Below, in pieces: positions 8,560 through 62,503 of a DNA stretch of 64,000 bases. The notes under the pieces were generated by a model, which worked only from the letters and a program-made list of their open reading frames with translations, was not told the origin of the DNA and did not search any database. The stretch is from contig OZ038379.1 of assembly GCA_964036045.1 (NCBI GenBank), positions 7,378,001 to 7,442,000 of the forward strand, written 5' to 3'. Position 1 is the stretch's first letter. Each line of letters opens with the position of its first letter. Both the position numbers and the translations under genes were made by a program. This DNA is from Eutreptiella sp. 'Long Island Sound 2002' (Eukaryota > Protista > Euglenida).

Positions 8560-9010
8560 TCCGTGGAATGCGCAGCCGCATGGAGTGCTGAACCAGGAGC
8601 ACACCCATAAAATGTCTGCACAAGGCTGAAGGGCTGATTTGTTGCACAACTGCGAAACTGTAACAACCACAGGGTCCAATCCAAAGGAAACCCAAAATGT
8701 TGTATGGACAGCGGTGACATTAGACAGAGCCAAGGAAGCCAACTACAAAATTCTGGAAACATTGCAGTATTATTTTGTGAAGTTTTGCACCCGCAAATAA
8801 TTTGGCATTGGACCCACTCCCAACTTCAGACCCTTCCCTGTCCAACAGATCACCTCCTTGAAGTACTCCCTGAAGGCATTTGGAGTGGACACCCACCCAG
8901 AGGCATGCTGTCATGGTGTAAAATGCCTTGTGATCCAATTTTGCCACAACAACAGAGTGAGCCTCACATCTGTTTCTGGAAGTCGTTGTCAAAACACACC
9001 TAACCCCAAC
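8560..9010 (-). mobile_element. Highly degenerate non-LTR (LINE-like) reverse transcriptase relic; the relic may extend over about 6640-9500
   Basis: VVVAKLDHKAFYTM resembles the 'D..KAFD.V' motif, and GSV*CHRCPYNILGFLWIGP resembles 'G.rQGcPLSP.LF'. There is no intact YADD, and the frame has several stops and frameshifts. Confidence 0.4.
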
Positions 9011-9670
9011 CCACACCCATTTGGCAACACCGAAATGAAAGGTGTTGTGTTGTCATTTGGCACCTCAGGGGATGTACTTATTTGGGACCACACAGGGCCA
9101 CAACGGCCCAAGGGCCATTTTAAAGAAGTGGGTGCCAATTGCATTGTGCTATTGGGCTCTTGATTGTGCTTTGTTTGTGGGAATGTTTACACAATTGTTG
9201 TGGCCAAAGCGTTTGCTCTCCGTAGGGGCCATTTTGCGAGGGAGTAATTTTGCGAGGGAGTAAAAATCCGGACGGTCCAGGTGTGCTTGCTGCAAAAGTA
9301 GCGTGCGGCATGTGCGTGGCACAAGTACTCCCCCACTGTGCATGCAATGCGAACCCCACAACTGTCTTCCAATTGCTATTTGGTTGCCTCCCAACCATAA
9401 CCAGGCACCCACCCACCACCACTGCCAGTTTGCCCCCAACAAAGACCAGAAGGTTTTATTTTGGTTACCATTCTGTCCTTTCTGCCTCAGCATTTCTCAC
9501 CAAGTCTGCAGCAGCACTCTGCCCTATCTATCCACCAGCTTTGTGCCCCGAGAGTTGTAGTCTGCCGAAGCAACAATTGACTCCATTTTGTTGTCCGTGC
9601 TGGAGATGACGGTGTAATTGGGGTAGAACCTCTGCTTTTCTGACTTTCTGTGCAATTGCAAACGCTTGAT

Positions 9671-10328
9671 ATGGACGGCGAGCTCCGGTTCCGCGCACAG
9701 CAAGGCATGCCTCAAGACCCCCACAACGACGCAGACTTCCACCACCACCACCACCACCACCAACACTACCACCACCACCAGCAGCCTCCCCAATTCGGTG
9801 GCCCCTTTGGGCAAGACTATCCCGGACAGCAATATGGACCACAAAGTGGGGCTCCTCCTGGCTATGGACAAGATCCGAACATGAACTACAATCCAAACTA
9901 TGGCATGCAATACAATTCTGGATACCAACCACCCGCTCAAGCCCCACCTGCCGGCTACGGTATGGGCGGCAACAATTTCGGCAATGATATGATGATGAAT
10001 TTCGGGATGCAGTACGGCAGCAAGGTGCTGCAAAAGACACAAGCCAATTTTTCCCGCTACCTTTTCTGGCTTCAAGGGCTGCATTACTACTTCACCGTCA
10101 ACAACAGCTACGTGAAGAATAAGCTGAAGCTGCTGATGTTCCCGCTGCGACACAAGTACCGCAGGCGCGAAGTGGATGCCGGGCACCGGTTTGAGACACC
10201 GGGCATGGCACCAACGACCAATTATAATTATTTGACGGCAGTCGACGATATCAATGCCCCGGACATGTATATCCCACTGATGGCCTTCATCACGTACATT
10301 TTGCTTGTTGGCTTCATTACGGGCATTG
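9671..10328 (+). CDS. YIF1: YIF1 (Yip1-interacting factor, ER-Golgi trafficking membrane protein), exon 1
   Basis: ATG at 9671. Contains YYFTVNNSYVKNKLKLLMFP and DINAPDMYIPLMAFITYILL, hallmark YIF1 motifs. Ends at a phase-1 GT donor at 10329. Confidence 0.93.
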
Positions 10329-11622
10329 GTTTCTTTCTCCACCTTGTGCGCCCCTACACTCCATGCCCTTTTCCTCTGTTCACATGCCCTCCAGGCCTCT
10401 GCACGGTGTTCGATTGCTGAACCCGTGCCCTGACCTCCTGTACCCTGAACTTTTTGGGGCTTTTCATCATCTTTTTTTTTCCCACCAGAATCACATATAT
10501 GGCACGAGGTTGCCCCCCCCCCCCCCCATACCCTGGAGGTACGGGAGGGGGGTACGGGGTGGGGTACGAGGAGGGGTGCGGCGAGGGGGGGGGTGGGGGG
10601 GGGCTAGGGGGGGTACGGGTGGGCGTAGGGGGGGGCGGGGGGCATTTACCCGTGCACACGAGAAGGCGGTGAATAGTCTGTAGACGCGGTCTGCCCCAAG
10701 TAGACGCGGTCTGCTAACGGGGGGGGGGGGGATACGGGGGGGGGGCGTACAGGGGGGGGGGGTAGGGTACGGGGGGGGGCAACTTCGGGCCGACTATCAG
10801 AATCAATCCTTTTACCAAAGTCAATTGTTTTTACCACAATCAAAATCTTATGACTATGGTCAAACAATTTGACCTACAACGACCACACGGCCCGGCGGCT
10901 GGGGGGGTGCCGGGGTCAACGACATTGGAACGGAGGGCGGAGGTCGTGTTGCAGCCAGACCTCTTTCGCCCCGGAAATCCAAGCATTGGCAATGCACATG
11001 CAGAGAGAAGTGTGAACCTGCAATGCAGCACCTTGAGGACTGGGTTTCATTCTTGTTTTCACAGACAGAGTGTGGGAAACAGGGTTTACTCTGCTTTTGT
11101 GCAAGTCAGTAAGTGTGAGGGGGAGTATTGAGGGGTTGGGGAACCGTTCACTTGGCCGTGACCGAGGGGACCTCTGGCCACTAATCCTCCTCCAACTCCT
11201 CCCCCTCAGACCCCCATCGCCATGCCACCCAGATACGTTCTCATTTTGCCACAAAACAGAATACCCACAGGTGCAGGTTGCGGATCTAACACGTTCCCAG
11301 CGCAACAAACAAATGTCCCTCAGCCCATGTCCTCTGTACTCCTGCCCCGCTGTACCCTCTGCACCCCTGCGCTCCATATGATATGATCTCACACGTCTAT
11401 CACATCTATACCTGCCCTATACATACTACACCATGCACTACACACTACACACTACACACTACACACTATATCCTACACATACTTTACTCTTCCACATTCC
11501 ACGCATTACACACTCTACATACTACACATACTATACTACACACTACGCACTCTACATGCTATACAACCCTACCCTTGTACACTGCGACTTCATCACGCAC
11601 AACATCCTCCTGCCCTCTGCAG
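10329..11622 (+). other. GT-AG intron of YIF1 (1294 nt) containing G-rich tracts and a CACTA-type simple repeat
   Basis: GT at 10329 and pyrimidine-rich CCTCCTGCCCTCTGCAG ending at 11622. The phase-1 join restores the frame G-I-G-G-V-N-F-S-P-E. Confidence 0.88.
11401..11560. repeat. Degenerate (CACTA/CACACTA)n microsatellite
   Basis: ACTACACACTACACACTACACACT and variants are visible directly. Confidence 0.85.
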
Positions 11623-11996
11623 GTGGAGTGAATTTTTCTCCTGAGGTGTTGATTGCGACGGGATCGTCATCAATGGTGCTGACATTGACGGAGATGTTGC
11701 TGCTGCGGCTCGGGTTCTCCGTGCTCTCCGTGCCCAGACCAGTGTACTCTCTTGATTTGTTATGCTTTATTTCATATAAGTTCTTCCATGTCAGCGTCAT
11801 CCTCCTCACGCGCATTGCCCTGCTGCGGTGGATGTACGTGTGTTTCTGGGTGATGTTCGCGGCCTTCCATGGGTATTTCCTGTTGCACACACTCAAATTG
11901 TATTGGCAAGGGAGCGGTAGCCAGCAGCATATGCTTTTCCTATACTTCGTTGCGGGCGTTCAATTTCCCATCTTCTTCTATTTGCAGCATGTGTAA
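11623..11996 (+). CDS. YIF1: YIF1 exon 2 (transmembrane helices); spliced product 343 aa
   Basis: NFSPEVL...LDLLCFISYKF...YFLLHTLK...FLYFVAGVQFP matches the YIF1 C-terminal half. TAA stop at 11994-11996. Confidence 0.92.
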
Positions 11997-14900
11997 GCAC
12001 CCAGATTTCTCTCAGCGCCCTGTCGTCCGGCAGTCTCGTGCCCCCCCACCCCCCTCAATCCCGTCGGCCGGACGAATTAGACCCCTCGAGCCCCCCAAAC
12101 CCCGGCCTGCAAGCCGCTCTGCTCCCCCGTCCGGATTCGGGCAGCGCCCATATTTCACCCTCCGTCTGGTGTCTGCGAGCGGCACCCCTCGTGCCTTCCC
12201 CACACACCAATCCCTGCCTCCGTCGCAGGTGACCTTATGGAAGACTCAGTGCTGGCTTCAGCAACAGTAAAAAACCCCCCTCCTTGGCAGGCGCTTGTAC
12301 TCGTTTTCGAAAGAAGTGGTTCGGTTGTGTCGGTGCTTGGGCGGTGGCAATCATTGCTTCGGTTGAGTGCGCGCCGTGCACGCTGCTTTTCCTGCTTCCT
12401 CAGTGCCCAAGCACGACCTTGTCCTTGCACTGCATCCCCCGGGGACTGCACCTTGCTTGCGAAATTGGGGAGCTGGCGTTTCCTTTGATTTTGTTCAACT
12501 TGACAGGGGTGCTTGACAGGGGTGAATTGCACCACCACGTCTCACGAGAGAGCAGCTGAGAACATGCCTTTTGCGCAGGGTCCCGCCTCACTTGCATCCA
12601 AATGCCCCAGCAGGTACTTGAATTGGCTCCCGGGCAATCCCAGGCAAAATGGTAAACGCAAGTGGGTACAGAGTCACGTTCCTCATGCTGTTGACTCTGA
12701 GATGGTTGGACCGGTGGGAATCTCCGGTGGCGAAAGGGGCGCAAGTGGCTGCGAACAATGTTTGCGGAGATCGACGGATTGGTGGGTTGTCTTGTGCAGC
12801 GTGTGCATTTCGCTTCATAGTTGCTGCTTGCTCGCTCAGAACGGGGTCTCGCGTCAAGCCCATAGCTGAGTATGAAGCAGCTCATTCTGATCATGTCGAA
12901 GGTAGCACGCTGGTGGCAAGTCTGCTTCTGTCTTCTAATCCCTGGTTTTGTGATCCTGGTACCTTTCAGCTCGCCACGGCCAGGATCTTTTGCCCACCGC
13001 GGCGGGACACTTTCTGGGCGTTAACAACGGAAGGCTTGAGTTGGAATGACGCCGACGTGCAACACCACAACTATATTGCTTTGGACGATATAAATGGCCT
13101 TGTGCAAGCCCCAGGCCCACACACACACACACACACACACACACGCCATGATGTCTTCGTACTAGTCCGTTATGCACGTGTGCTTTGCAGCATAACAGGC
13201 TGTGGGCCATGGGCGTTCAAGGGGGGGGGGCTTGCATAGCTCGATCATGAAACGATTTTTGGTGTGATATTCACGATGACGCTCCATCTCACTGCCATTG
13301 TTTGGAAGTCTCCACGTCCTGTCCAAACCATTTGAGGAGATACAGGAACTCTGGATTTTACCATTTTGCAGCACAGAAAAGTATGCCATACTGCTTGGCA
13401 CATGAGTGAAGGGTTCCTCATGGGCGTATTGACTCCATTGAGTTGTCACATCGTGTGCAAAAAGGGGCGGGGAGGGGGGGCGGGGAGGCATAGGAAGGAC
13501 AGGGCGGCATGCAAAGATATCTTGAGCTCCATCTGTCCCTGTCCGGTCAAACGGGGACAGTGTTGCCTGGGAGTGCGCATTTGTGGGTGGTCAGTTTTAA
13601 CCGAAGCTGAGTCTTCTGGCCACTTTCGGTACACCCTGCGGTACACCCAGGGACCCTTTGGATGGTGTCGAACACGTTTCGGCCATCCGCAGGTTGTGGA
13701 GCCATGCATGTTCTGTGTTGATTAAACGCGCATGAACTGACTTTGTGCCGGATTGATCAAGCACAAAGAACGTGCGCAATGCAATATCCCACGGGCGTTG
13801 AAGCGCATGAACGTGGTTGGAACCAACTCCACTGACGGAGTTTCCACCCAAAAGAGAGTCTCAGGCACAGTGCGCGCACAGTGCATACACCGAGTTTATG
13901 CAACACAGGAACCAGGACAATGGTGATGCAGCGAAAACCCTCCACCCAGAAACATACTATGAAAACTACAGTGCACTACCAAGTCTTGTGGGATTGTAAT
14001 CACCGTCCACAGGCCAAGGCTTCACTCCTATGACAGGGGTCTTAGGAGTGAAGACCCCTGTCATTCTGCATGCTGATCATAGACGTCAGAATGCCAGATC
14101 ATGTGTGCAGTGATGGAAGACGTTTTTTGCTTGTTTTGCTTGTTTCAAACTTTTTTTTACTTTTTTTGGATGTTTGTGGATTTTTTGGTACACTTTTGGA
14201 TTCCTTGGAGTTGCACCATGTGTAAATTACATGGGACATCATAGTCACCGGCTGGAGGGGGCAAGGACACAGTACAAGACACAAGGGAACAAAGAGGCCT
14301 TCCTTGGGCCGGTTGCAATGTGCAAATAGCACTTTTCAGAAGCCTCCAAGCGGCATCATGTTGTGGGGCTCTGAAGGGAGACTGTTGGCCCAGGTTTTGA
14401 CTCCAACAGCACACGGTGTGTGCACAGTGTGCGCGCAATGCGGAAGGGGAAGAATGTGCAGATGTGCAGTGCTGGCCAACATGCATACCTCGCTTCCCTC
14501 ATCAACACAATGGTGGTGCTGTGCTACAGACCGGGCCCTGGACCAGCACTGGGCAGGCAGACTCCCAACTGCCTGAACTCCCAGGAAGTGTTGATGGGCT
14601 GCCTGTTGCAGTGCCGAAGGCTTGTCAAGAACATGCACACACATGCAGCTCTCACACACTCACTCGGTGCATGGGTACGTGGGCTGCAGAGCACAAGGTT
14701 TTCCTTGGCACTGCTCTGTGCTCCTCTAACAGGCATGCGCAATAGGTGCTTCCAGGCCTGGTTCGGGACGAGTGCTCAGGGACCCCATCACAGCACTTTG
14801 CTATGGTGTGTGGTGCCTGGATGCATGTACTCGACCATTCATTTCCGCTGCTTTCATTTCAGTCAGGCACAGAGGTTGGGCATGGTTTTGCAACAGGTAA

Positions 14901-52290: not shown

Positions 52291-53607
52291 TGAACTAACA
52301 AGCGTAGCGTCATGACACAAGAACTTTTGCGGAGTAGCTGCGGAGTAGCGGCACGAGCAGACAATTGGGTTTACGGTGGGTGCAAAAGTATTGAAATGCC
52401 CTCCCTTTAGCATTTACAGCATGAGGGCAAACACCTACGTACTATGCAATTGAACTTTATGACACTTGCTACTAACATCGGTGCTTGCACTCCATCATTT
52501 TGCGTTGATTCCAAAGCACAATATGCGGGTGAGACACATGCAGCCCATCCATATCCTCAAAGCTTCACGATGCGTGACACTCAGATGGTTTATGTTCATC
52601 CTTGCTTCAAGAGACAAATACAAAACCTTAAGGCTCCCAATTAGGAGGTGTGTTCAAATTCACCCGGATAGTACATGGAAGGGTGAATTGTACAACACAA
52701 TGCAAAGCAAGCGAGCAGCGCTCAAAAGCTCAAAGACATGGAACTCGATATAGACAGCAAAATGCGGTGCCCCATGTGCTGCTGGTCTCAACACCAATAA
52801 TCTGATGGGGGGCACGGTACAAAAGGGATTGAAAACAGGAAAATGGACGACCCTTGGACGTCTCAGTTTGAATGGCATCGCATCTATACCATAAACAATT
52901 TGTCATTTGGGGCACGCCAACTCTTCGGCAATCGCGAAGTCTCCCGAGGCAGAAGGAATACCTTCTCGAGCCTTCCGTAGGATGGGATCAAAATTTTACC
53001 CGCGCCCGCAAGGGTCGGCCAAAACCAAAACCAAACAAAACCAAAATTTGGTGCCACGCACAGGTTAGCAGCTGCTACAAGCGGAAAAGTAAGGATGCGG
53101 GCTTCAATGGGGGAGAGCTGATGAAAATGTTCTCAAATAAAATGCATCCGGGCTGCACCCGTGACAAGTGGTAAAAGAGCCTTCTCCGTTCTCAAATTGT
53201 GCAATGCCAGTAAGGGAAACCACTTCAAGTGATAGCGACATCCACACGATGCAAGCCAATCCACCCTCCACCATTGAGTGCAAAAAGTCCAAGATATCGC
53301 ACTTTTGATGCCAATTCAAACGAAAGCGGATGGTTCGCCGCTGCTGTGCATAGCGCATGACGTCGTGCCTGCAAAATCGTTCAAAAACCCAGTTCAGCCG
53401 CAAACGGTGGTCACTAGCGAAAAAACATGAACACGACTCTCCAATACGGCCATGTGGTTGGTCGGCATGGCAAATCCCTGCTCTGGCACTCCCGGGAACC
53501 TAGTGACTTGGGAGGGAATGGGCCCAATTGTGGTGGTAGCTCACGTGTTCCCTTTGCAAGATTTTGTCCTTCATGCAAAACGGAAAATCTTTGAATCTTT
53601 GAATTGA
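52291..53607. repeat. Left arm of a long inverted duplication; carries the empty integration site at 52630/52631
   Basis: The reverse complement matches 55655-56690 joined to 61989-62328 almost base for base, apart from an extra segment of roughly 60-70 nt near 55745-55805 in the right arm. Confidence 0.95.
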
Positions 53608-56600
53608 GCCGCCAACCTAAGCTTGGTTGGGGTTTGGATACATGTGAAAAATCCCTAGATCATCGAACAAAGGTTCTGTACTCCGTTTCCCATCCGGAGC
53701 CCCCGTTTGGCGCGAAGATTTCCCCGACAACTTTACCACAAGAGCACACACCCGAGGCATTCGTTTAGGGGAATTAGACGCAAGGTTTTGGTGGAAGCCC
53801 CGTTTTTGGTGCGGGAACATGCATCGAGTTTACTGAAGACGTGCCGCGAGGTACATGTTGCTTCACGGATGAACTTGCCGTGACCGGCAGTGCTGAGGAT
53901 GGCCTGAAGGGAGACGGGGCACGCAGTTTGCGCTCTTGTTGCACCGTGAGAGCGTGTGCTGGTGAGGGTTGTACTTGTTGGGGTACATAGGCTCACCACC
54001 ACTAGCGGAACACCACTCCGCTGTTGGACAGAGTGTTTGCACTTCGTGCTGAAAGGGGTATTGCCGTGTGGATCCCCAAGGGAATGTGCATATCCCAAGA
54101 TGTTCCCTTCATAAAGTCCGTTCCGGACCCTGGCAACTCATTCCATTTGAAAAACTCCGTTCCAGCTAAACTCCATTCCATTCCATTTTGAAACTCCTAT
54201 CCCAAGATCTCGAATATTCTTGTCGTACTGCAGAATTTGTGTTAAATAAGGAATAATAATGGCCTCGGCCACCGCGGGCTTTTTTCCTTATCCTTATGTT
54301 CTAATAATGTGTTTTGTAGAGCCAGGATGTTTTCCTAATTTTCTAATGGAGCCCAACCTCAGGGATGTATTTTGATGTGTTCCTCATTCTTTGCTTCGCC
54401 GCCTTCGGCGGTATTGTTCCTTGAATGAATGCACATAAGCATGCATGGGCACAAAGCAGGCACAAAGCGTAAGAGGGAATTCTGAATGTGCTAAGCACGG
54501 CTAACCAAGGACGTGCAGCGAATCACGTCGCACATCTGCTCCCACCAAGTATGTCAGAGCCGACTTGTGCCGAGGCTGAGCCTTTTGGGCAGTGATCGAG
54601 TAAGGCAAGCCCAAGGCACCAAAACCAGAGCGGCAATTTCATGAACGCAAATTCGGGGTGCGAAGCACAAAAAGTTTTTTCCCACCTAGTGCTGTAGTGT
54701 GTCTCCAAGCACTTGTTGTGGAATCCGTCCCCTGGAGTTGAGGCACCGGCACTTTAATGAGGATAGTGATGAGGATGATGAGAATGACCCAGCTTGGGTT
54801 GATTTCATGGTAGAGATGGGGAGGAAGATGAGGAGGTTCAAGAGGAGGAGGACGATGACAATCAATTGCCGACCAATCTTGCTGATTGATAGCTTTAAAG
54901 CTACTACCACCCGCGGTGGACGAAGTACATGCATTCGACCCAAGTACTCATGAGTTTAGTGTCACATGTGGACAACGCCGATGTTTTGGCTGCTGTCGGA
55001 TCTGTGGCAGATTGAAACTCAGGTATCACACCTGGGTGATCGATCAATCACTCTACTGTATATACAGGTCAACACAGTCAGGCACCGTTTTGGTGCCTTC
55101 GCGGTCCCCACAGTAGCCACAGAAACGGTCAAGCGGGTAACCGGGCAGATCACGGAGTGTCAAACCACCAGGTGCCAGTATGCAATTTGCAGCCTATAGG
55201 ACGCACTAGAGTTTTCACAGCGCAGATAATTCCCCGTAAATTCGCGGTACGTCTCTGGACGATGTCTGTGGTGGGGAGTTTTCGCACACAGCGCAGATAA
55301 TTCCCTGTAAATTCGCGGTCGTCTCTGGACGATGTCTGTGGTGGGGAGTTTCTGACACAAATTTCTGGGATGCGGCTAAGTAAGGGATAAGTCCCTTACT
55401 GAGCCGCGTCATCTTTTCTCCTCAGTACCTGACAGGACATTCAGGAATTGACACAATGTTGGAACCGGATTTTCTGGGATCACATTTCTGATTCTGATTT
55501 CTATCTATTGCAGAAATTTGGCAATTTCAGAATGCAGGCTAGGGGCCCAAAAAAAAGAAAAGTGAATGATGTTGATTGTTTCGACAGTGCTATCCCATTA
55601 AATGTCTAAATGTATCATTTCAATGAGACAATCCATGGTTATGCTTTTTTTTTATCAATTCAAAGATTCAAAGATTTTCCGTTTTGCATGAAGGACAAAA
55701 TCTTGCAAAGGGAACACGTGAGCTACAACCACAATTGGGCCCATTCTCTCCGTATGTCCCCATGGCCGTACCAAGAGGACGCAAAAGTTTCGCCGAGTCG
55801 CTTCTTCCTCCCAAGTCACTAGGTTCCCGGGGAGTGCTAGAGCAGGGATTTGCCATGCCGACCAACCACATGGCCGTATTGGAGAGTCGTGTTCATATTT
55901 TTTCACTAGTGACCACCGTTTGCGGCTGAACTGGGTTTTTGAACGATTTTGCAGGCACGACGTCATGCGCTATGCACAGCAGCGGCGAACCATCCGCTTT
56001 CGTTTGAATTGGCATCAAAAGTGCGATATCTTGGACTTTTGCACTCAATGGTGGAGGGTGGATTGGCTTGCATTGTGTGGATGTCGCTATCACTTGAAGT
56101 GGTTTCCCTTACTGGCATTGCACAATTTGAGAACGGAGAAGGCTCTTTTACCACTTGTCACGGGTGCAGCCCGGATGCATTTTATTTGAGAACATTTTCA
56201 TCAGCTCTCCCCCATTGAAGCCCGCATCCTTACTTTTCCGCTTGTAGCAGCTGCTAACCTGTGCGTGGCACCAAATTTTGGTTTTGTTTGGTTTTGGTTT
56301 TGGCCGACCCTTGCGGGCGCGGGTAAAATTTGATCCCATCCTACGGAAGGCTCGAGAAGGTATTCCTTCTGCCTCGGGAGACTTCGCGATTGCCGAAGAG
56401 TTGGCGTGCCCCAAATGACAAATTGTTTATGGTATAGATGCGATGCCATTCAAACTGAGACGTCCAAGGGTCGTCCATTTTCCTGTTTTCAATCCCTTTT
56501 GTACCGTGCCCCCCATCAGATTATTGGTGTTGAGACCAGCAGCACATGGGGCACCGCATTTTGCTGTCTATATCGAGTTCCATGTCTTTGAGCTTTTGAG

Positions 56601-56690
56601 CGCTGCTCGCTTGCTTTGCATTGTGTTGTACAATTCACCCTTCCATGTACTATCCGGGTGAATTTGAACACACCTCCTAATTGGGAGCCT

Positions 56691-56759
56691 CGTGTTTTGT
56701 GCTTGCTCAAAACACGGGTTTAACTTAATTACCTCTTCATTAGGCATTTGTCAGTTTGT
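56691..56759 (+). repeat. Split direct repeat A1 (5' terminus)
   Basis: 69 nt, with two mismatches to A2 at 61471-61539. Confidence 0.97.
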
Positions 56760-56771
56760 TCCCTTTTTGCC

Positions 56772-57629
56772 ATGTCTGGGCTTCACGGGAGCAGCGGGAT
56801 GCAAGAGGACGCAATTTTTGTGTCCGACGATTCACACGCGGAATCGGGTACGGCCAAGGAATTGGCCGAGTTGAAGGCCATGCTCCGTCGACAGGATGCG
56901 GAGGTGGAGCGCTTGAGGGTACAATTAGCCGCCACGGAGATTGAAAAGCGCAAGGACACGGAAATCCCGGACCTCAACTTGGATGGGATAGAGGAGTTTT
57001 TGAAGAAGGAAAGAGTCACGGTTTGGATGAAGGATGCATGTGCGGTATTAAAGAAGTATGGCACGGCGGTTCCGAAGCCGAGTAGGCCAGCAGACGTGGG
57101 AGGTAAGCAAGGAGAACAATTAAGTCTCGGAGATGCGTTGGCGTACAGAATGTGGAAAGTCCTCATTGTTGCACATGCGACTTACGTGAAGAGGTATTCG
57201 CCGGGACAAGCATCGGGGCCCAAAGGAAAGTCGGAAAATTTTGATGAGGCCATGGCGAGTGGCGGGGATTCCTGGAGATATATAACTGCTAAGATCTGTT
57301 CACATAGACGCGTACGTGTTGAAATCTCAACACGTACGCGTTGGTTTTTTCTTTGTTGGAAATTTGTCATTTTTCATGCAAAATTCATGTGTGGGGTATC
57401 ACCTTACCCAACCCAACCCCTCTTTGCCCTTTCCCTACACCACTGGGTGCCACTGCAAACATTGCCGACCGTAGGTCGCCTTCTCCCTCTGCAGAGTGTC
57501 CCGAAAACCATACTGAATTTCCCAAAACAAGAGTATTCAATTCAAGAAACGGGACGGGGTAGCCTACTGGTTATCCAAGGCCGGAGACTGGATACCGGTG
57601 GATGCACAACCCAGCGAAGATTGCCGTAG
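56772..57629 (+). CDS. Gag-like ORF1 of the YR retroelement (coiled-coil N-terminus); 3' part may contain an intron
   Basis: ATG at 56772, just after A1. Contains the heptad-like ELAELKAMLRRQDAEVERLRVQLAATEIEK. It occupies the first-ORF position of DIRS-order elements. No diagnostic motif. Confidence 0.65.
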   Translation: MSGLHGSSGMQEDAIFVSDDSHAESGTAKELAELKAMLRRQDAEVERLRVQLAATEIEKRKDTEIPDLNLDGIEEFLKKERVTVWMKDACAVLKKYGTAVPKPSRPADVGGKQGEQLSLGDALAYRMWKVLIVAHATYVKRYSPGQASGPKGKSENFDEAMASGGDSWRYITAKICSHRRVRVEISTRTRWFFLCWKFVIFHAKFMCGVSPYPTQPLFALSLHHWVPLQTLPTVGRLLPLQSVPKTILNFPKQEYSIQETGRGSLLVIQGRRLDTGGCTTQRRLP

Positions 57630-57774
57630 ATGCACGGCGGCGGGAAAGCTGGAGAACTTGCGGTACTGGTGTTTCCGGTGCCCATTGTGGTCGTGACGAG
57701 AAAACCCGTGGCGGTATCGGGATGCCGTCGCGGGGATCGAACCACCGGGAGAGCAGAGGCCGACGTACCGGTGG

Positions 57775-59415
57775 TTGGCGCTTGAGTTTGAGTCGCACCG
57801 ACGTGAGGAAGAACCCACAACACCTGTGGGTGTTGCAATTCGGGGTTGGAAGCCGTCTACGACGGCTGGATACGCGTCCAGTTTGCGAAGGTTGGGAGAC
57901 CTTGAGGAATCCTTGGGAGAAGAGGGCAACTTGCCTTCCATCCTATCTCGGAAACTCGCTCAGCACGTTCAAAATGGTGGCAGCTCAAGTGGGGCGAGAG
58001 GCATCATCTCGGTAGTGCGGGCTTGTGAAGACCTCCAAATGGCTGCAGGGGTCGTCAAACCACTGCATTGGCGGCTTGCTAAAGCGGGGGCCCAAGCGGG
58101 AGTCCAAGAATATGCAAGTCCTGTACTGCTGCGTCATTTGGTGGATAGAACGACTTCGGATGGCGAAAGGGCGGTCGTGGCAATGGCCCTGGTGTCATAT
58201 GTTTGTTTTCTTAGAGTGGCGGAGGCTGCTAGCGTACGTGTTGGGGATGTACGTGACAGCAGTTATTTGGTTTTTTGGAATAGTAAGACAGGACATGAAG
58301 GGTGGCAGAGGAGGCCGGTGCCTCCTTGGGTCAGGCCGTTTGTTGAGTGGCTTCACGACTGGGCTGAGGGACGAGGGTGCGCCAGGGACGACTTGCTCTT
58401 TCCTGCAGGGGCTCCTCAGCTCGAGAAAACAATGGCGGACTTGGTGCGTGGGACGGCATGGTCCCGACATCGGTGGCACTGTTTCCGACGTGGAGGAGCT
58501 GCAGCGTGCTGGAAGAGAGGACCGGCCCTGCCTCATTTTAAATGGTGGGGCAGATGGGCAGCAACGGCGACGGCAATGGCGTATGCGCTTGGGTACCGAG
58601 ATGAAGAGGTTGTGGCCCCGCTTTGTCTACCACAGGTTTGGGGTTCCGTATCAGCGGCAGCTTTCGCGGATCCGCAGCAAGTATGGGGAGACATCATGTT
58701 CGATGAGCGGCATCAGGACAAAAACCGGCCGGTGTGGGGCCGGAGCGAGCGACGCCGAGCAGCGCCCAGTATGTTCAGGGGTAAGAGATTTGCAGGGGAA
58801 CCGAGATCTGATGCGGCAGACTTGGGCAGTTCATCGGAGGACACGGGATCAGGAGTATCGGCCGATGATGGGCCGAGTGTGCGTTCGGGTGTCCGGAGGA
58901 CTGCAGAGGTTGTTCCAGCGCCAGAGGCAAGAAGGAGTTCAAGAGCAGGACCGACGATGGGGAGGCCAGGTGTCGCTGAGCGGGGACTTGCGGGTCCTGC
59001 CGGTCCACTCCCCAGCGGGGGATCGGATGCCAGCGATGCAGCGAGTGCTGGGCAGCAAGTGCCCGGCAATGGAGGAGAGAGGGCAAAGTTCAGATTCACG
59101 GCGCCGCCGCCGGGACGACCAAAGGCGCCAACGAAGTCGGGGCCATGGCGGTCAGCCGCTGAGCCTGCCCGAGGGCACCGAGGAGTCAAGCGTACGGTGG
59201 GTGGCAGAGCCCTTTCAGTACCAGCAGGCCGGAAGGGTGGCGCGGCGGTGGCGGTGGCGACGCCTTCAACGAGACGCCCGGTTACCACAAGGGTGGCGGG
59301 AGCTACACGACGACCGCGGCACAGCGATGGAGAGTCCGGACCGGGACGGAAGCGATCCAGGACTCTACCCAGTGGAGCCGGCAGCACCAGGGGGGGGGCT
59401 CGCCAGCAACGGTGA
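57775..59415 (+). CDS. Tyrosine recombinase ORF with a long Arg/Gly/Ser-rich C-terminal extension
   Basis: Catalytic R in FLRVAE, K in NSKT, HxxR in HCFRRGGA (58477), GRW, and the nucleophile Tyr in AMAYALG (58582-58584). Confidence 0.93.
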   Translation: MALEFESHRREEEPTTPVGVAIRGWKPSTTAGYASSLRRLGDLEESLGEEGNLPSILSRKLAQHVQNGGSSSGARGIISVVRACEDLQMAAGVVKPLHWRLAKAGAQAGVQEYASPVLLRHLVDRTTSDGERAVVAMALVSYVCFLRVAEAASVRVGDVRDSSYLVFWNSKTGHEGWQRRPVPPWVRPFVEWLHDWAEGRGCARDDLLFPAGAPQLEKTMADLVRGTAWSRHRWHCFRRGGAAACWKRGPALPHFKWWGRWAATATAMAYALGYRDEEVVAPLCLPQVWGSVSAAAFADPQQVWGDIMFDERHQDKNRPVWGRSERRRAAPSMFRGKRFAGEPRSDAADLGSSSEDTGSGVSADDGPSVRSGVRRTAEVVPAPEARRSSRAGPTMGRPGVAERGLAGPAGPLPSGGSDASDAASAGQQVPGNGGERAKFRFTAPPPGRPKAPTKSGPWRSAAEPARGHRGVKRTVGGRALSVPAGRKGGAAVAVATPSTRRPVTTRVAGATRRPRHSDGESGPGRKRSRTLPSGAGSTRGGARQQR

Positions 59416-60949
59416 CCAGCCCCTGGGCTCCCCCTTGAGAGTGCCTGGGATTCTGGGGGGTTGGGTGGGCACGGAGGCTGGCCTGCATCTTAAAGGTGGA
59501 ATTCTCCTGACCATCATGGCTGTGCTGACCCAACACTTCTGGTGGCTCAAGTGTAGGCTACAGTGTGCAGTAGGGGTTCTGGTGCGTCGTCTGTGGATAC
59601 TGTTGAATCGCATTATTTCTGTTTGTGAGGACTTTCGGTTGGATGAGCCACTGGGGATTTGCCTGATGGCAGTACAGTACCTCTCGCCAGGGGTTTGGGA
59701 TTCTGTTAATCACCTCTCCACCTCTCCCAAGCCTAGGGAAGCGAAGGTCACCCCGGAGATTTTGGAGGCTGGTATAGGTAATGTGGGGTGCTATGCGATG
59801 TCTGAAGCGGAATGGGATGCTGCGGTGCCCCCGGAGTTTTTGGAATTCATGAGAACTTTTGATCTGCGGGAGGCTGACAGGGGAAATGGGAGGGTGCGAG
59901 CAACGGTGAGTGGAATGACGGACGCCATTCGAAGGACTGGTGTTTTACATGATGAATCACCCTCTCTACCGCCAACCTGTTTTCCTTTTGTAATACCCAA
60001 AAATGATATTAAGCGCTCCTTGATTTTAAGTTGCGTGGGTATTCACAGGGGATTGCATCTCAAGCCACCAAAGTTTTCACTAGCGTCTTGGGAGGGAATA
60101 GGTAGATGGATGGCGGAGCAGCCGGCTGGGGTGGAACTGTACGGTACTCATATCGACCTCTCTAATGCCTTCTGGTCGTTCCTGTTACCCAGAAAAGCGA
60201 GGCGAATTTTCCGCTTCTTTACCCACCAGAAGGGGGGGCTCGTGTCGCTGGACCGCCTCCCGTTTGGGTGGGCCTTTTCGCCCTATCTGTGTCAGGAGAT
60301 ATTGGGGCGGGTGGTGGGAGATGCAGTGCCGGATGGGGTCTTTTTGGTGCATTACTTGGATGACTTTATTTTGTTATCCAGCGACAAACCCCTGCTTGGG
60401 ACAACCACGAGTCACTTGAAAGATCGTATCGTGCGGGCGGGATTCTTGGTTAGTGCTAAGAGCACACTGAGCCCCGTCCAGAAGCTACAGGCCTTGGGGA
60501 AGGTGGTTGATTTGAAAGAACGTTCCATCCAAGTGCAGCCTTTTGTGTTCCTCCAGTTCCTGGTTGCGTGGTTGCGACTGGCCACGGGGGCGTACTCGAA
60601 GCGGCGGCTGGACAAGCTGCTGGGTACCCTGCAGTGGCATTTAGGGCCACGACGCGGGTTTTCAGGGGTGCTCGCAGGAGCGTATGCCTGGTCGAGATTT
60701 GGACCGGAAAGGGCGCCAGCCACCCCTGTTAAAGTGTTGGAGGGATTGGCGACAGCAATTGCGCGCATAGGCCAGAAGTGGAGACCGCTGTCGGAGTCGC
60801 GCATGCGAAGGGTACGGCAGCTGGGAGGTTGGTGCCTCTCTGAAAGGCCGGCATCTAGAGGCGATTTGTTTGGGGCTGTGATATTGGTGGATGCCGCCAA
60901 AGACGGTGTTTGCTACAGGGTGGGTGGTGTGTTGCCTGCTAACCATTGA
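59325..60949 (+). CDS. Reverse transcriptase ORF (frame open from 58025; start approximate), continuing into RNase H across an in-frame TGA at 60947-60949
   Basis: Contains FVIPKND..SLI, HIDLSNAFW, LPFGWAFSP and HYLDD (YLDD at 60353-60364). The first RNase H Asp is in ILVDAAKDG. Confidence 0.93.
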
Positions 60950-61360
60950 CAGTCTGTGCGAACATGGGTATGCCCGGACGGACCCTGTAACCAGCAGGTG
61001 GCGGAGCTCATGGGCATAGCGTGGGCGGTGAGATTGGCGGTGCGGTTGGGTTGGAAGGTTTTCACTGTCTTCGCCGACAGTATGGTGGGCATTGCTCAGG
61101 TGAGGGGTTTGAAGGCAGCATCCCATCTGCGTACCCAGTTGCGTGTGTTGCGCGCACTGACGTGGGTGCTGTATAACACAGGAGTGATAGTACGTCTAAT
61201 TTGGGTGCCGTCAGAGCTTCATCCTGCCGATCCAATGAGTCGAGTGGACATGGATTTCGGGGGGCGGGTGCACCAAGCTGAGTTGGAGGCGTGGGAGAGA
61301 TGGCGAGTATTGCAGAAGTATCCTGAACTCTGCTGGGTGCAAGGCCTAGCTTATGTATGA
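60950..61360 (+). CDS. RNase H domain, same frame as RT
   Basis: NQQVAELMG (Glu), VFADSMV (Asp) and WVPSELHPADPMSR (Asp) are typical of DIRS-class RNase H. Confidence 0.92.
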   Translation, partial: QSVRTWVCPDGPCNQQVAELMGIAWAVRLAVRLGWKVFTVFADSMVGIAQVRGLKAASHLRTQLRVLRALTWVLYNTGVIVRLIWVPSELHPADPMSRVDMDFGGRVHQAELEAWERWRVLQKYPELCWVQGLAYV

Positions 61361-61411
61361 CGCCCACCTGGGTCGCGCCGCGGGTGTCAGAAGCCAGCCT
61401 GGTAAAGCTTT

Positions 61412-61539
61412 CCAGTGAGCCGAGGCAAGCATTGTTTAGTATTGTTTCGTGCATGCACTAGGGTTAAACTCGTGTTTTGAGCTTGCTCAAAACACTGGTT
61501 TAACTTAATTACCTCTTCATTAGGCATTTGTCAGTTTGT
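61412..61539 (+). repeat. Internal B1-A2 junction (copy of the joined ends)
   Basis: B1 (61412-61470) is identical to B2 (61930-61988). It is directly followed by A2, a copy of the 5' terminus. Confidence 0.97.
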
Positions 61540-61929
61540 CCCCCCCCCCCCCACCCCCTGCCACTAATCGGGGCGGGTTTCTGCCACACTTCATAGCTGT
61601 TTTGTGGAGTGGGAGCGGTGGGATGTCCAGCTTAAGAGCGACAGTAGTGGGCGCAGGGGGGGGGTTTGAAGGTGAGAGGGTGGCCTGCTCTGACCCCACC
61701 CACCCACCCCCTGCCGCGATTGAGTTACATCCGCGCATGACCAGCTATGATGGGCAGGGACGGGGCACTGTATGTTGAATGTATCTTTGCTTTCGTCGGC
61801 GGGACATGACAGAATACGCGGGTGAGTGAGTGCGTGAACGTGTGGGTATTGGTCGGGTCCCCTGCGGGGAGGCGAACGCTGTCGGTCACAACGATGTTAT
61901 ACTGGCCACTACGGTGGCAACTGAACAGG

Positions 61930-61988
61930 CCAGTGAGCCGAGGCAAGCATTGTTTAGTATTGTTTCGTGCATGCACTAGGGTTAAACT
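61930..61988 (+). repeat. Split direct repeat B2 (3' terminus)
   Basis: 59 nt, identical to B1. Confidence 0.97.
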
Positions 61989-62503
61989 TAAGGTTTTGTA
62001 TTTGTCTCTTGAAGCAAGGATGAACATAAACCATCCGAGTGTCACGCATCATGAAGCTTTGAGGACATGGATGGGCTGCATGTGTCTCACCCGCATATTG
62101 TGCTTTGGAATCAACGCAAAATGATGGAGTGCAAGCACCGATGTTAGTAGCAAGTGTCATAAAGTTCAATTGCATAGTACGTAGGTGTTTGCCCTCATGC
62201 TGTAAATGCTAAAGGGAGGGCATTTCAATACTTTTGCACCCACCGTAAACCCAATTGTCTGCTCGTGCCGCTACTCCGTAGCTACTCCGCAAAAGTTCTT
62301 GTGTCATGACGCTACGCTTGTTAGTTCACAAAATCATTGTTTTCCATTATTTAAATTATGTATTATGTATGTTCATGTATTACATATTATTCATTTCGTT
62401 TATTTACATGTAAAACGTGCAAGTAACCCGTTTTACCGGCACGAAAACGGGCTATTAACCCGTTTTTCTCGGCCATGTAACCCGTTTTACTGCCGAAAAA
62501 ATA

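What the first reader, a model, noticed from the sequence alone, without database searches (positions are those of the whole stretch)
61463..61504. End-joining creates a 20-bp hairpin, and the integration breakpoint sits beside its only mismatch: possible folded-ssDNA recombination substrate
Seen: across the B|A junction the consensus is GTTAAACT|CGTGTTTTGAGC-TT-GCTCAAAACACGGGTTTAAC, giving 19 Watson-Crick pairs plus one G-T. That G-T is the last base of B, immediately before the breakpoint defined by the empty site. A1 and A2 each deviate from the consensus at one different position. Integration leaves 8 nt of the left arm at the element's right end and the rest at its left end, destroying the long stem. 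Established: classical YR sites exchange strands in a central spacer between inverted arms, whereas integron attC and CTX-phage attP are folded single strands recombined within a stem near unpaired bases. Inference: this retroelement may integrate a single-stranded circular cDNA through a hairpin site, with directionality built in. I know of no such mechanism described for DIRS-order elements.
Basis: partly seen in the sequence, partly recalled or inferred. Interest (0 to 1): 0.85.

Follow-up and report, generated by a model that had tools for sequence, protein, structure and literature searches.

The report
Conserved junction hairpin of recombinase retrotransposons
Where the two ends of this euglenid jumping gene meet there is a small DNA hairpin whose shape, but not its sequence, is kept across distant relatives, and the element always opens next to the hairpin's unpaired bases, much as bacterial integron cassettes do, which suggests how this poorly understood class of retrotransposons inserts.

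Summary
The 42-nt palindrome at 61463-61504 is real. It is the internal B1|A2 junction of a 5.3-kb VIPER/TATE-like tyrosine-recombinase retrotransposon (56689-61987) in a euglenid genome.

Family-wide the site is a 7-bp outer stem, two mismatched positions (T.G and C.T), an 11-bp inner stem and a TT loop.

The central idea holds up:
- Six sequence-unrelated versions keep the same architecture: a 6-7 bp outer stem, 1-2 unpaired bases, then a 6-11 bp inner stem. They come from RT lineages down to 32% identity, two of them from another metagenome.
- The outer stem shows many compensatory changes, and the distance between the outer arms varies from 19 to 34 nt.
- In three families every end sits at the same phosphodiester, and the target shares only R-H-C.
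- About 100 right ends show no 6-8 bp staggered-exchange footprint.

This argues against a lox-type duplex core and for a structure-specific, attC-like site. Single-strandedness itself is untested, and recombinase geometry and the wobble pairs point to the sense strand, not first-strand cDNA. The internal copy is never used for integration, which is unexplained. The scan had already noted this hairpin in a sister family (s1-210111).

The parts
61463..61469 (+). Outer left arm GTTAAAC, the last 7 nt of repeat B1. It ends in the AAC where the crossover maps.
   Evidence: B copies always end ...TAAAC. It pairs with 61498-61504.
61470..61471 (+). Spacer TC, the first two bases of repeat A2. It lies opposite TG (61496-61497), giving a T.G wobble plus a conserved C.T mismatch.
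   Evidence: The C.T mismatch is kept in types I, II and IV. The partner of T8 is G or A.
61472..61495 (+). Inner hairpin: an 11-bp stem (GTGTTTTGAGC / GCTCAAAACAC) with a TT loop.
   Evidence: It is replaced by unrelated 6-10 bp stems in other families.
61496..61504 (+). Spacer TG and outer right arm GTTTAAC.
   Evidence: In public contigs, position 61497 varies G/A and 61494 varies A/G, matching the sister subfamilies.
56689..56724 (+). Left end of the integrated element. It comprises the shared C (56689), T8 (56690), the inner hairpin with a private A>T change at 56700, and the outer right arm (56718-56724) with a private T>G change at 56716. The outer left arm is missing here.
61981..61987 (+). 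Right end of the element: GTTAAAC of B2, followed by target DNA from 61988.
52631..52632 (-). Paralogous empty target site (GGGAGC-C-TTAAGG read on the minus strand). The single C at 52632 corresponds to the C found at both ends of the insertion.
   Evidence: The empty form is also present in public contigs as a joint 56688>61987.
56690..56763 (+). Repeat A1 (74 nt).
   Evidence: 56689-56763 versus 61469-61543, 96% identical.
61412..61469 (+). Repeat B1 (58 nt).
   Evidence: 61412-61470 versus 61930-61988, 100% identical. The last base of that match is target T by coincidence.
61470..61543 (+). Repeat A2.
61544..61929 (+). Unique spacer X between A2 and B2. It is rich in C and G runs and its length varies between copies.
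61930..61987 (+). Repeat B2.
57775..58674 (+). Tyrosine recombinase domain, the first ~300 codons of ORF 57775-59415.
   Evidence: Pfam Phage_integrase below threshold (E 0.015). A profile of three relatives hits the Cre catalytic domain (E 0.0035). R147, H235-x-x-R238, W261 and Y274 are invariant.
59990..61360 (+). Reverse transcriptase and RNase H. In this copy they are separated by an in-frame stop at 60947-60949.
   Evidence: Pfam RVT_1 E 1.2e-12 and RVT_3 E 1.5e-4. Other copies lack 6 nt here.
56748..57629 (+). First ORF, gag-like by position only. In this copy it is interrupted by a 247-bp insertion at 57280-57526.

Best explanation
The palindrome is the recombination site of a VIPER/TATE-like tyrosine-recombinase retrotransposon, and it is read as a shape rather than as a sequence.

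Folded, either as a hairpin of the sense strand or as a cruciform arm, it forms three parts:
- a 7-bp outer stem ending in AAC/GTT;
- one or two unpaired bases;
- an inner stem whose sequence and length are free to vary.

Proposed mechanism (inferred, not shown):
1. The recombinase sits on the outer stem and cuts the sense strand at the stem/spacer boundary. The likeliest cut is AA|C, as in integron attC.
2. It swaps that one strand with a loosely specified target (purine, not-G, C).
3. Only the first swapped base (C) needs to pair, because the next bases are unpaired in the site itself.
4. The junction is finished by replication or second-strand synthesis, not by a second staggered exchange.

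After insertion the outer left arm (7 nt) is 5 kb away from the rest, so the end site cannot refold.

Shown here: the architecture, its covariation, and the uniform crossover. Inferred: folding in vivo, one-strand exchange, which strand folds, and the exact cut.
For: 1. Six sequence-unrelated versions share the architecture, and all fold the same way (z -5 to -8; table):
- type I: the window family and all families at or above 62% RT identity;
- type II: L053;
- type III;
- type IV: L069;
- types V and VI: metagenome elements L073 and L074 at 32-33% RT identity.

2. Six of the 7 outer-stem columns show two or three different Watson-Crick pair types. Stem length is 7 bp in five of six types.

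3. The distance between the outer arms varies: 19, 21, 22, 24, 28 and 34 nt. That is incompatible with a fixed duplex dimer site, but irrelevant once the site is folded.

4. The crossover is uniform.
- Left ends: C before the first base of A in 10 of 10 (type I), 37 of 37 non-AAAC contexts (type II) and all type III left ends.
- Right ends: always ...AAC then a variable base (about 100 ends).
- Only one right end (C4:153013020) carries more than 4 nt resembling the start of A. A 6-8 bp heterologous overlap would predict about half.

5. The unpaired base(s) are the first base(s) 3' of the crossover in types I, II and III.

6. The target shares only R-H-C with the site. In type II, position -3 is a purine in 35 of 37, position -2 is never G, and position -1 is always C. 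The satellite target of L069 is GAAC.

7. The same logic is established for integron attC: an R box ending in AAC next to an unpaired spacer, a variable terminal structure, crossover in AAC, and resolution by replication (PMC5027507).

8. Family-level non-Watson-Crick pairs are all T.G on the sense strand (types Ia, Ic, II, IV, V).
Against: - No experiment or read data show a folded or single-stranded form. The public runs are contigs only and cannot resolve the closure junction.
- Both strands fold about equally well in silico.
- Compensatory change in a palindrome is also what co-evolving symmetric protein-binding half-sites would give.
- The internal B1|A2 copy is identical over 59+75 nt and is present in any closed circle, yet it is never used. 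All 15 testable left ends are canonical and none is permuted. So extra determinants or a different substrate are needed.
- First-strand cDNA, the single strand seen in DIRS-1 (PMC7192593), is the antisense strand. That is the less favoured strand here.
- For types V and VI the ends are not mapped, so their hairpins are placed at the element boundary only by position.
Confidence: 0.45

Rival explanations
1. The hairpin is a replication element rather than the recombinase substrate. It would act in the RNA or in cDNA: for example as a signal or splint that lets the internal B1|A2 junction template the joining of the cDNA ends, as a primer or strand-transfer structure, or as a packaging signal. 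The crossover would coincide with it only because the ends are defined there.
For: - The internal copy is kept in every element yet never used for integration. That fits a template role like the DIRS-1 internal complementary region, which is essential for retrotransposition (PMC7192593).
- The T.G wobbles are on the sense (RNA-like) strand.
- A 3' hairpin has been suggested as a primer in DIRS-1 (cited in PMC7192593).
- Contigs from RNA libraries cover parts of the element.
Against: - It does not explain why the unpaired bases sit exactly 3' of the crossover in three families.
- It does not explain why the outer arm ends in the AAC that the target partly mimics.
- It does not explain why the outer stem keeps a 7-bp length.
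- The internal hairpin lies about 520 nt from the 3' end, so it is not a terminal self-primer.
Confidence: 0.25
2. The site is a duplex site on a double-stranded circle. The recombinase and accessory factors bind the arms as ordinary double-stranded DNA, with further arm-type sites outside B and A as in phage lambda attP. The palindrome reflects paired binding sites, and no folding occurs.
For: - The standard DIRS model ends in a double-stranded circle (PMC7192593, PMC3266345).
- Exclusive use of the closure junction is most simply explained by flanking determinants in X-B2 and the start of the internal region.
- DIRS1-like elements use a 3-bp AAN junction matched in the target (PMC3266345), and here the site has AAC and the target A-W-C.
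Against: - No inverted arm lies 6-8 bp from the crossover in types II and III.
- The partner arm is 19-34 bp away at varying helical phase.
- There is no heteroduplex footprint in about 100 right ends.
- The target lacks 6-8 bp of identity.
- The inner stems keep perfect complementarity while changing sequence completely, which is more than spaced binding sites require.
Confidence: 0.18
3. One reading: a single-stranded circular first-strand (antisense) cDNA folds at the junction and is the integrating molecule, with the G-T pair as the key irregularity.
For: - Single-stranded, mostly linear and partly circular, cDNA is the observed intermediate of DIRS-1 (PMC7192593).
- The antisense strand folds as well as the sense strand in silico.
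Against: - The G-T pair is not the conserved irregularity. It is T.A in sister families, while C.T is conserved.
- On the antisense strand the wobbles become A.C mismatches.
- Tyrosine recombinases cut the strand that runs from the bound arm into the spacer. With the outer stem as the arm, that is the sense strand at the observed position (established geometry of Cre and attC, from my own knowledge).
Confidence: 0.1
4. It is a chance palindrome or a neutral by-product without function.
For: None beyond the fact that dead copies accumulate uncompensated changes.
Against: - About 0.05 such palindromes are expected per element.
- The same architecture appears at the same place in six unrelated sequences.
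- The sequence is nearly invariant across type I families whose neighbouring DNA is about 75% identical.
Confidence: 0.02

Closest known systems
Integron attC sites recombined by IntI integrases
   Same: - An imperfect palindrome conserved in structure, not sequence.
- A 7-bp outer box ending in AAC paired to GTT, directly next to unpaired spacer bases.
- A variable terminal hairpin.
- A crossover at the AAC.
- Minimal micro-homology with the partner.
- Uniform junctions, as expected from one-strand exchange resolved by replication (PMC5027507).
   Different: - This is a eukaryotic retroelement with its own, Cre-like and very divergent, recombinase.
- The rest of the outer arm reads GTTA/GGTA rather than RYYY.
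- No extrahelical bases were seen inside the second box, only the 1-2 nt spacer.
- The partner is a nearly random genomic site, not an attI.
- Single-strandedness is unproven.
CTX phage attP(+), a folded single-stranded site used by XerC/XerD
   Same: A hairpin made from two inverted half-sites with an unpaired central region. One pair of strands is exchanged and the product cannot be reversed. This comparison is from my own knowledge and was not checked in a paper here.
   Different: CTX uses host recombinases and a specific chromosomal dif site. Here the enzyme is element-encoded and the target is loose.
DIRS1-like elements: internal complementary region and 3-bp circular junction
   Same: - An internal copy of the joined ends that templates the junction.
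- A junction trinucleotide AAN (AAC in some elements) matched in the target.
- No target-site duplication (PMC3266345, PMC7192593).
- Single-stranded cDNA intermediates (PMC7192593).
   Different: - DIRS1 has inverted terminal repeats, so its joined ends are a palindrome centred on the crossover.
- Here the repeats are direct, the palindrome is a separate 42-nt module, and the crossover is off-centre at the stem/spacer boundary.
- Only the C is strictly shared with the target.
VIPER and TATE of kinetoplastids (VIPER-like superfamily)
   Same: The gene order is gag, recombinase, reverse transcriptase/RNase H. The split direct repeats are arranged A1...B1 A2 B2. The host phylum is Euglenozoa (PMC6681497).
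   Different: The host is a euglenid, not a kinetoplastid. No junction hairpin or mapped crossover is described for VIPER or TATE in that paper, and I could not examine their sequences.
loxP / FRT / lambda core-type sites
   Same: A tyrosine recombinase and inverted arms.
   Different: In those sites the arms flank a 6-8 bp overlap in which both strands are exchanged. Here the arms are 19-34 nt apart, the crossover is at one arm, and there is no staggered footprint.

Membership tests
DIRS-order, VIPER-like tyrosine-recombinase retrotransposon | Reverse transcriptase and RNase H | tested here: met
   Pfam RVT_1 E 1.2e-12 and RVT_3 E 1.5e-4, just above its cutoff.
DIRS-order, VIPER-like tyrosine-recombinase retrotransposon | Tyrosine recombinase with the R..HxxR..Y catalytic residues | tested here: met
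   R147, H235, R238, W261 and Y274 are invariant in three distant relatives. The profile hits the Cre catalytic domain at E 0.0035. The Pfam hits are below threshold. The AlphaFold model was too poor to use.
DIRS-order, VIPER-like tyrosine-recombinase retrotransposon | Split direct repeats A1...B1 A2 ... B2 and the order gag, recombinase, RT | tested here: met
   The same layout is seen in L069.
DIRS-order, VIPER-like tyrosine-recombinase retrotransposon | Conservative insertion without target-site duplication | tested here: met
   The empty site has one C where the filled site has one at each end. The same holds for the satellite target GAAC in L069.
Integron attC-type structure-specific site | Structure conserved while sequence and length vary | tested here: met
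   Six types.
Integron attC-type structure-specific site | Outer box ending in AAC/GTT next to an unpaired spacer, with the crossover in AAC | tested here: met
   Met in types I-IV. The crossover is mapped to within one base of the C in types I, II and III. Types V and VI end in AAT and ATC and their ends are not mapped.
Integron attC-type structure-specific site | Extrahelical bases in the inner box that select the strand | tested here: not met
   The inner stems are fully paired apart from single T.G wobbles. Only the spacer is unpaired.
Integron attC-type structure-specific site | Recombined as a folded single strand, with one strand exchanged and resolution by replication | not testable with these tools
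   The only indirect evidence is uniform ends with no stagger footprint.
Integron attC-type structure-specific site | IntI-type integrase | tested here: not met
   The best solved-structure matches are Cre. No IntI appears among the hits at E up to 10.
Classical duplex core site (lox/FRT type) | Inverted arms 6-8 bp apart with the crossover between them | tested here: not met
   The arms are 19-34 nt apart and the crossover lies at the left arm.
Classical duplex core site (lox/FRT type) | Staggered exchange: overlap identity with the target, or mixed junctions when the overlap is heterologous | tested here: not met
   The target shares only R-H-C. Of about 100 right ends, one carries more than 4 nt resembling the start of A.
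DIRS1-like circular junction | A 3-bp junction motif (AAN) identical in the target and found at both element ends | tested here: inconclusive
   The site has AAC. Type II targets are A-W-C in 21 of 37 (ATC 16, AAC 5), and only the C is invariant.

The most novel reading that the evidence does not exclude
A large, ancient clade of eukaryotic tyrosine-recombinase retrotransposons (VIPER-like elements, and Dam-methylase-bearing DIRS-like elements) integrates through a structure-specific folded site. One strand is exchanged at AA|C next to unpaired bases. This would be the eukaryotic counterpart of integron attC and CTX attP recombination, arising either by convergence or by descent from a phage-type system. 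It would explain how these elements insert almost anywhere without target duplications.
Probability: 0.3. Interest if true: 0.85.

Novelty: new variant of a known kind. Interest (0 to 1): 0.72.

Why it matters
How DIRS-order retrotransposons integrate has never been shown biochemically. The textbook model, in which a double-stranded circle recombines at a 3-bp motif, rests on sequence anatomy.

This analysis adds a conserved stem-mismatch-stem module with a base-precise crossover. That gives a defined 35-45 nt substrate that can be synthesised as top strand, bottom strand or duplex and tested with one recombinant protein. If the site proves structure-specific, three things follow:
- It would link eukaryotic retroelements mechanistically to integrons and filamentous phages.
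- It would explain near-random targeting with only a C required.
- It could yield a recombination system that is free of sequence constraints.

The result also corrects how the ends of these elements should be annotated: the element ends at ...AAC and starts at the first unpaired base.

Tried and rejected
- **Whole-window repeat scan.** A 20-bp satellite swamped the output. I used a local BLAST of 48-64 kb instead.
- **Genome fetches.**
I switched to 0.9-1.7 kb pieces and to pattern searches that print the matches.
  - Pieces L051, L052, L055, L056, L058-L060, L064, L066 and L068, and loci L070-L072, showed no recognisable junction in what was fetched.
  - This says nothing about those families.
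- **Count of the pattern TAAACTC...TGGTTTA.** The count is not above its reversed control, so only the repeated families in the list are meaningful.
- **Within-type-I compensation.**
  - The variant left arm GGGGTCTGAGC (two adjacent copies on C3) has an unchanged right arm. It is therefore decay of a dead copy, not covariation.
- **Public reads.**
  - All runs are contigs. B plus A (134 nt) exceeds the assembly word, so a closure junction or circle cannot be told from the internal junction.
  - No starts, ends or strand information were obtained.
- **AlphaFold model of the recombinase domain from a 3-sequence alignment.** Mean pLDDT was 47, so I did no fold search.
- **Strand choice by folding energy.** Both strands fold about equally well, so this was uninformative.
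- **Classical core site at the crossover.** I looked by eye for an inverted arm 6-8 bp to the right. Type I has a weak 4 of 7 match and types II and III have none, so I rejected it.
- **C>T at the second base of A1 in L045, next to a TTGT target.** It could be a heteroduplex trace, but CpG decay in an old copy explains it more simply.
- **Literature.**
  - I found no description of a junction hairpin in split-repeat recombinase retrotransposons.
  - The subscription papers by Goodwin and Poulter (2001, 2004) and Poulter and Goodwin (2005) could not be read, so prior mention there is not excluded.

Full report
**What is at the coordinates**

The window is C2:7378001-7442000 of a 2.28-Gb eukaryotic genome. 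An earlier scan note takes it for a marine euglenid, Eutreptiella; I did not check that.

Positions 61463-61504 read GTTAAAC TC GTGTTTTGAGC TT GCTCAAAACAC TG GTTTAAC. A local self-comparison gives the following layout:

| Feature | Coordinates | Note |
|---|---|---|
| Repeat A | 56689-56763 and 61469-61543 | 96% identical |
| Repeat B | 61412-61470 and 61930-61988 | 100% identical |
| Inverted duplicate of both flanks | joined at 52631-52632 | an empty site |

The site is therefore the internal B1|A2 junction of an element laid out as A1, internal region, B1 A2, X, B2 (56689-61987).

The element encodes three recognisable products:
- a first ORF without database matches;
- a tyrosine recombinase, supported by a sub-threshold Pfam hit, a profile match to the Cre catalytic domain at E 0.0035, and invariant R, HxxR, W and Y residues;
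- a reverse transcriptase and an RNase H.

That gene order plus split direct repeats is the VIPER/TATE layout of kinetoplastids (PMC6681497), which fits a euglenozoan host.

The window copy is damaged. It carries a 247-bp insertion at 57280-57526 and a 6-nt insertion that introduces a stop at 60947-60949. Both are absent from other copies.

Most 100%-identical copies on C2 (4.9-12.3 Mb) and on small contigs share the flank CTTAAGGTTTTG. They are one insertion copied by segmental duplication.

Fifteen independent copies (L031-L045) show that both A1 and A2 normally read CACTGG:
- The window's A2 is the family form.
- The window's A1 has two private changes.

The true site therefore has two adjacent irregular positions, T8 opposite G35 and C9 opposite T34. 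These lie between a 7-bp outer stem and an 11-bp inner stem.

**Where the element opens**

In ten independent full copies the left flank is variable up to an invariant C, followed by T-C-G-T-G. Right ends are ...GTTAAAC followed by any base.

A larger sample of type I right ends (about 45 non-junction rows) gives T 18, C 13, A 11 and G 5 at the next position.

The window's empty site (GGGAGC-C-TTAAGG) has that single C.

**Related families**

A six-frame search with the RT region found a continuum of families from 100% to 44% identity, with 17,291 candidates.

All families at or above 62% identity keep the type I sequence almost unchanged, although the neighbouring DNA is about 75% identical. 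There are two family-level variants. G35 becomes A, so T8 then pairs. A32 becomes G, giving a T.G wobble in five independent copies.

More distant lineages carry unrelated sequences with the same layout:

| Type | RT identity | Sequence (outer arm, spacer, inner stem, loop, inner stem, spacer, outer arm) | Source |
|---|---|---|---|
| II | 47% | GGTAAAC TC ACGGTG CTTGT CACCGT TG GTTTACC | L053, |
| III | 45% | GGTAAAC A CCAGTTTG TCCCC CAAACTGG GTTTACC | 12 copies, |
| IV | 44% | GTGAAC TC, 10-bp stem, 10-nt loop, TA GTTCAC | ENA contig L069, |
| V | 33% | CGCGAAT AT GGCGCTTC GACA GAAGCGCC GG ATTCGCG | metagenome scaffold L073, |
| VI | 32% | GCAAATC G GCTGATT CCT AATCAGC A GATTTGC | L074, |

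In L073 and L074 the hairpin was the only palindrome of that quality in the locus. It lies between the last and first ORFs. Those elements carry a Dam-like methylase and a weak integrase match.

- All six types fold as outer stem, 1-2 nt mismatch or bulge, inner stem.
- About 0.05 such palindromes are expected per shuffled element.
- Six of the seven outer-stem columns show two or three different Watson-Crick pairs.
- The outer stem is 7 bp in five of six types.
- The distance between the outer arms ranges from 19 to 34 nt.

**Crossover in other families**

- Type II left ends are always preceded by C (37 of 37 non-AAAC contexts). Position -3 is a purine in 35 of 37 and position -2 is never G. 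ATC (16) and AAC (5) are the commonest target triplets.
- Type II right ends (55) are AAAC plus variable sequence. None carries five or more bases of the start of A.
- Type III left ends again have the C, followed by the bulged base (A, rarely T or G), so the unpaired base is the first base after the crossover.
- In L069 the satellite target reads GAAC, identical to the end of B.

**What this excludes**

A lox-type reaction exchanges the two strands 6-8 bp apart. With a non-identical target, half of the descendants would then carry the element's overlap at the right end and the target's overlap at the left end.

Among about 100 right ends, only one (C4:153013020) resembles the start of A beyond 4 nt. 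Targets share no 6-8 bp with the site. In types II and III no inverted arm lies 6-8 bp from the crossover.

A single, fixed exchange point next to unpaired bases is what integron attC sites show. There, a 7-bp box ending in AAC sits next to an unpaired spacer, the crossover is in AAC, and resolution is by replication (PMC5027507).

If the cut is AA|C, the only swapped base that must pair is the C. That would explain both the invariant C in targets and the unpaired bases that follow it. This step is inference.

**What remains open**

- *Folding.* Nothing shows folding in vivo, and a cruciform in a duplex circle would serve as well as a single strand.
- *Which strand.*
  - Tyrosine recombinases cut the strand that runs from the bound arm into the spacer. 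This is established for Cre and attC and is from my own knowledge.
  - With the outer stem as the arm, the cut strand is the sense strand.
  - The family-level wobbles are all T.G on that strand.
  - The single-stranded cDNA seen for DIRS-1 is the first strand (PMC7192593), which is the other one.
- *The internal copy.*
  - A closed circle would contain two identical junctions, yet none of 15 testable left ends is of the permuted form flank|A-X.
  - So the hairpin alone does not define the integrating site.
  - The internal copy may act only as template, like the DIRS-1 internal complementary region that is essential for retrotransposition (PMC7192593), or flanking sequences may matter.

**Comparison with what is known, and novelty**

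The element is a new member of the VIPER-like group. The junction module and the base-precise, non-staggered crossover are not described in the papers I could search. The older subscription papers were not readable.

DIRS1-like elements are known to use a 3-bp AAN junction matched in the target (PMC3266345). The AAC here is probably the same feature embedded in a hairpin.

The scan had already reported the type II hairpin with compensating changes in five families (s1-210111, whose left end is C2:1854994, seen). I reached the same conclusion independently. I add the crossover statistics, the two metagenome types, the test that excludes a staggered exchange, and the unused internal copy.

**Handling notes**

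- I built no element-length consensus or repaired frame.

Noticed in passing
window:1-2400: A 20-bp tandem satellite fills the start of the window (at least 105 registers at 20-nt spacing, 67% G+C, strong C skew).
   Followed up: no
window:52291-53607 versus 55655-56690 and 61987-62328: A large inverted duplication (98-100% identical) carries the target of the element in empty form on one arm and filled form on the other.
   Followed up: partly
G000:C2:4.9-12.3 Mb and contigs C763, C1045, C1168, C1591, C2097 (L001-L026): The same insertion with the same flank is present at least 20 times. A segmental duplication of tens of kilobases has been amplified in this part of chromosome 2.
   Followed up: partly
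window:57280-57526: A 247-bp insertion is private to the window's lineage of copies and contains a 34-nt palindrome (57308-57341). The same segment occurs elsewhere, inverted, in L035 and L043, and public contigs end at its borders. It is probably a small non-autonomous mobile element.
   Followed up: partly
window:60944-60949: Six extra bases bring an in-frame stop between the reverse transcriptase and RNase H. Other copies and public contigs lack them.
   Followed up: partly
window:61449-61458: A perfect 10-nt palindrome, GTGCATGCAC, lies 4 nt upstream of the outer left arm inside repeat B. Its GCATGC core is kept in most sister families.
   Followed up: no
G000:C1:113481931-113494508: Four type II junctions lie on one strand, spaced 4392, 4077 and 4077 bp apart. 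This is a head-to-tail array of shortened units, as expected if a circle recombines with a resident junction or if cDNA is made by rolling-circle copying.
   Followed up: no
G000: for example C2:116044539, C2:144131865, C3:35875214, C6:74146223, C7:6581840: A recurrent 24-nt motif, TAAAC TC GACCTCCATG TG GTTTA, has the outer arms and both spacers but no inner stem. It may be a related family with a plain loop or a non-autonomous derivative.
   Followed up: no
L073:1-9278 (metagenome scaffold): The scaffold holds 1.63 head-to-tail units of a 5675-bp element with a Dam-like methylase ORF, a recombinase and an RT. It is either a tandem array or an assembled circle, with one hairpin per unit.
   Followed up: partly
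L069:1-2551 and 8710-12160: A type IV element sits in a 215-bp satellite array. The neighbouring monomers give about 20 copies of its empty target, ...GGCCA GAAC AAGC...
   Followed up: yes
window:56701-61453: Contigs from a metatranscriptome run and from a run guessed to be RNA cover several parts of the element. This hints at transcription, although DNA carry-over cannot be excluded.
   Followed up: partly
G000:C4:153013020-153013048: One type I right end is followed by TCTGGTTTTG, which matches the start of repeat A (TCGTGTTTTG) at 8 of 10 positions before diverging. It is the only candidate among about 100 ends for a shifted or staggered junction, or it may be a broken internal junction.
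   Followed up: no
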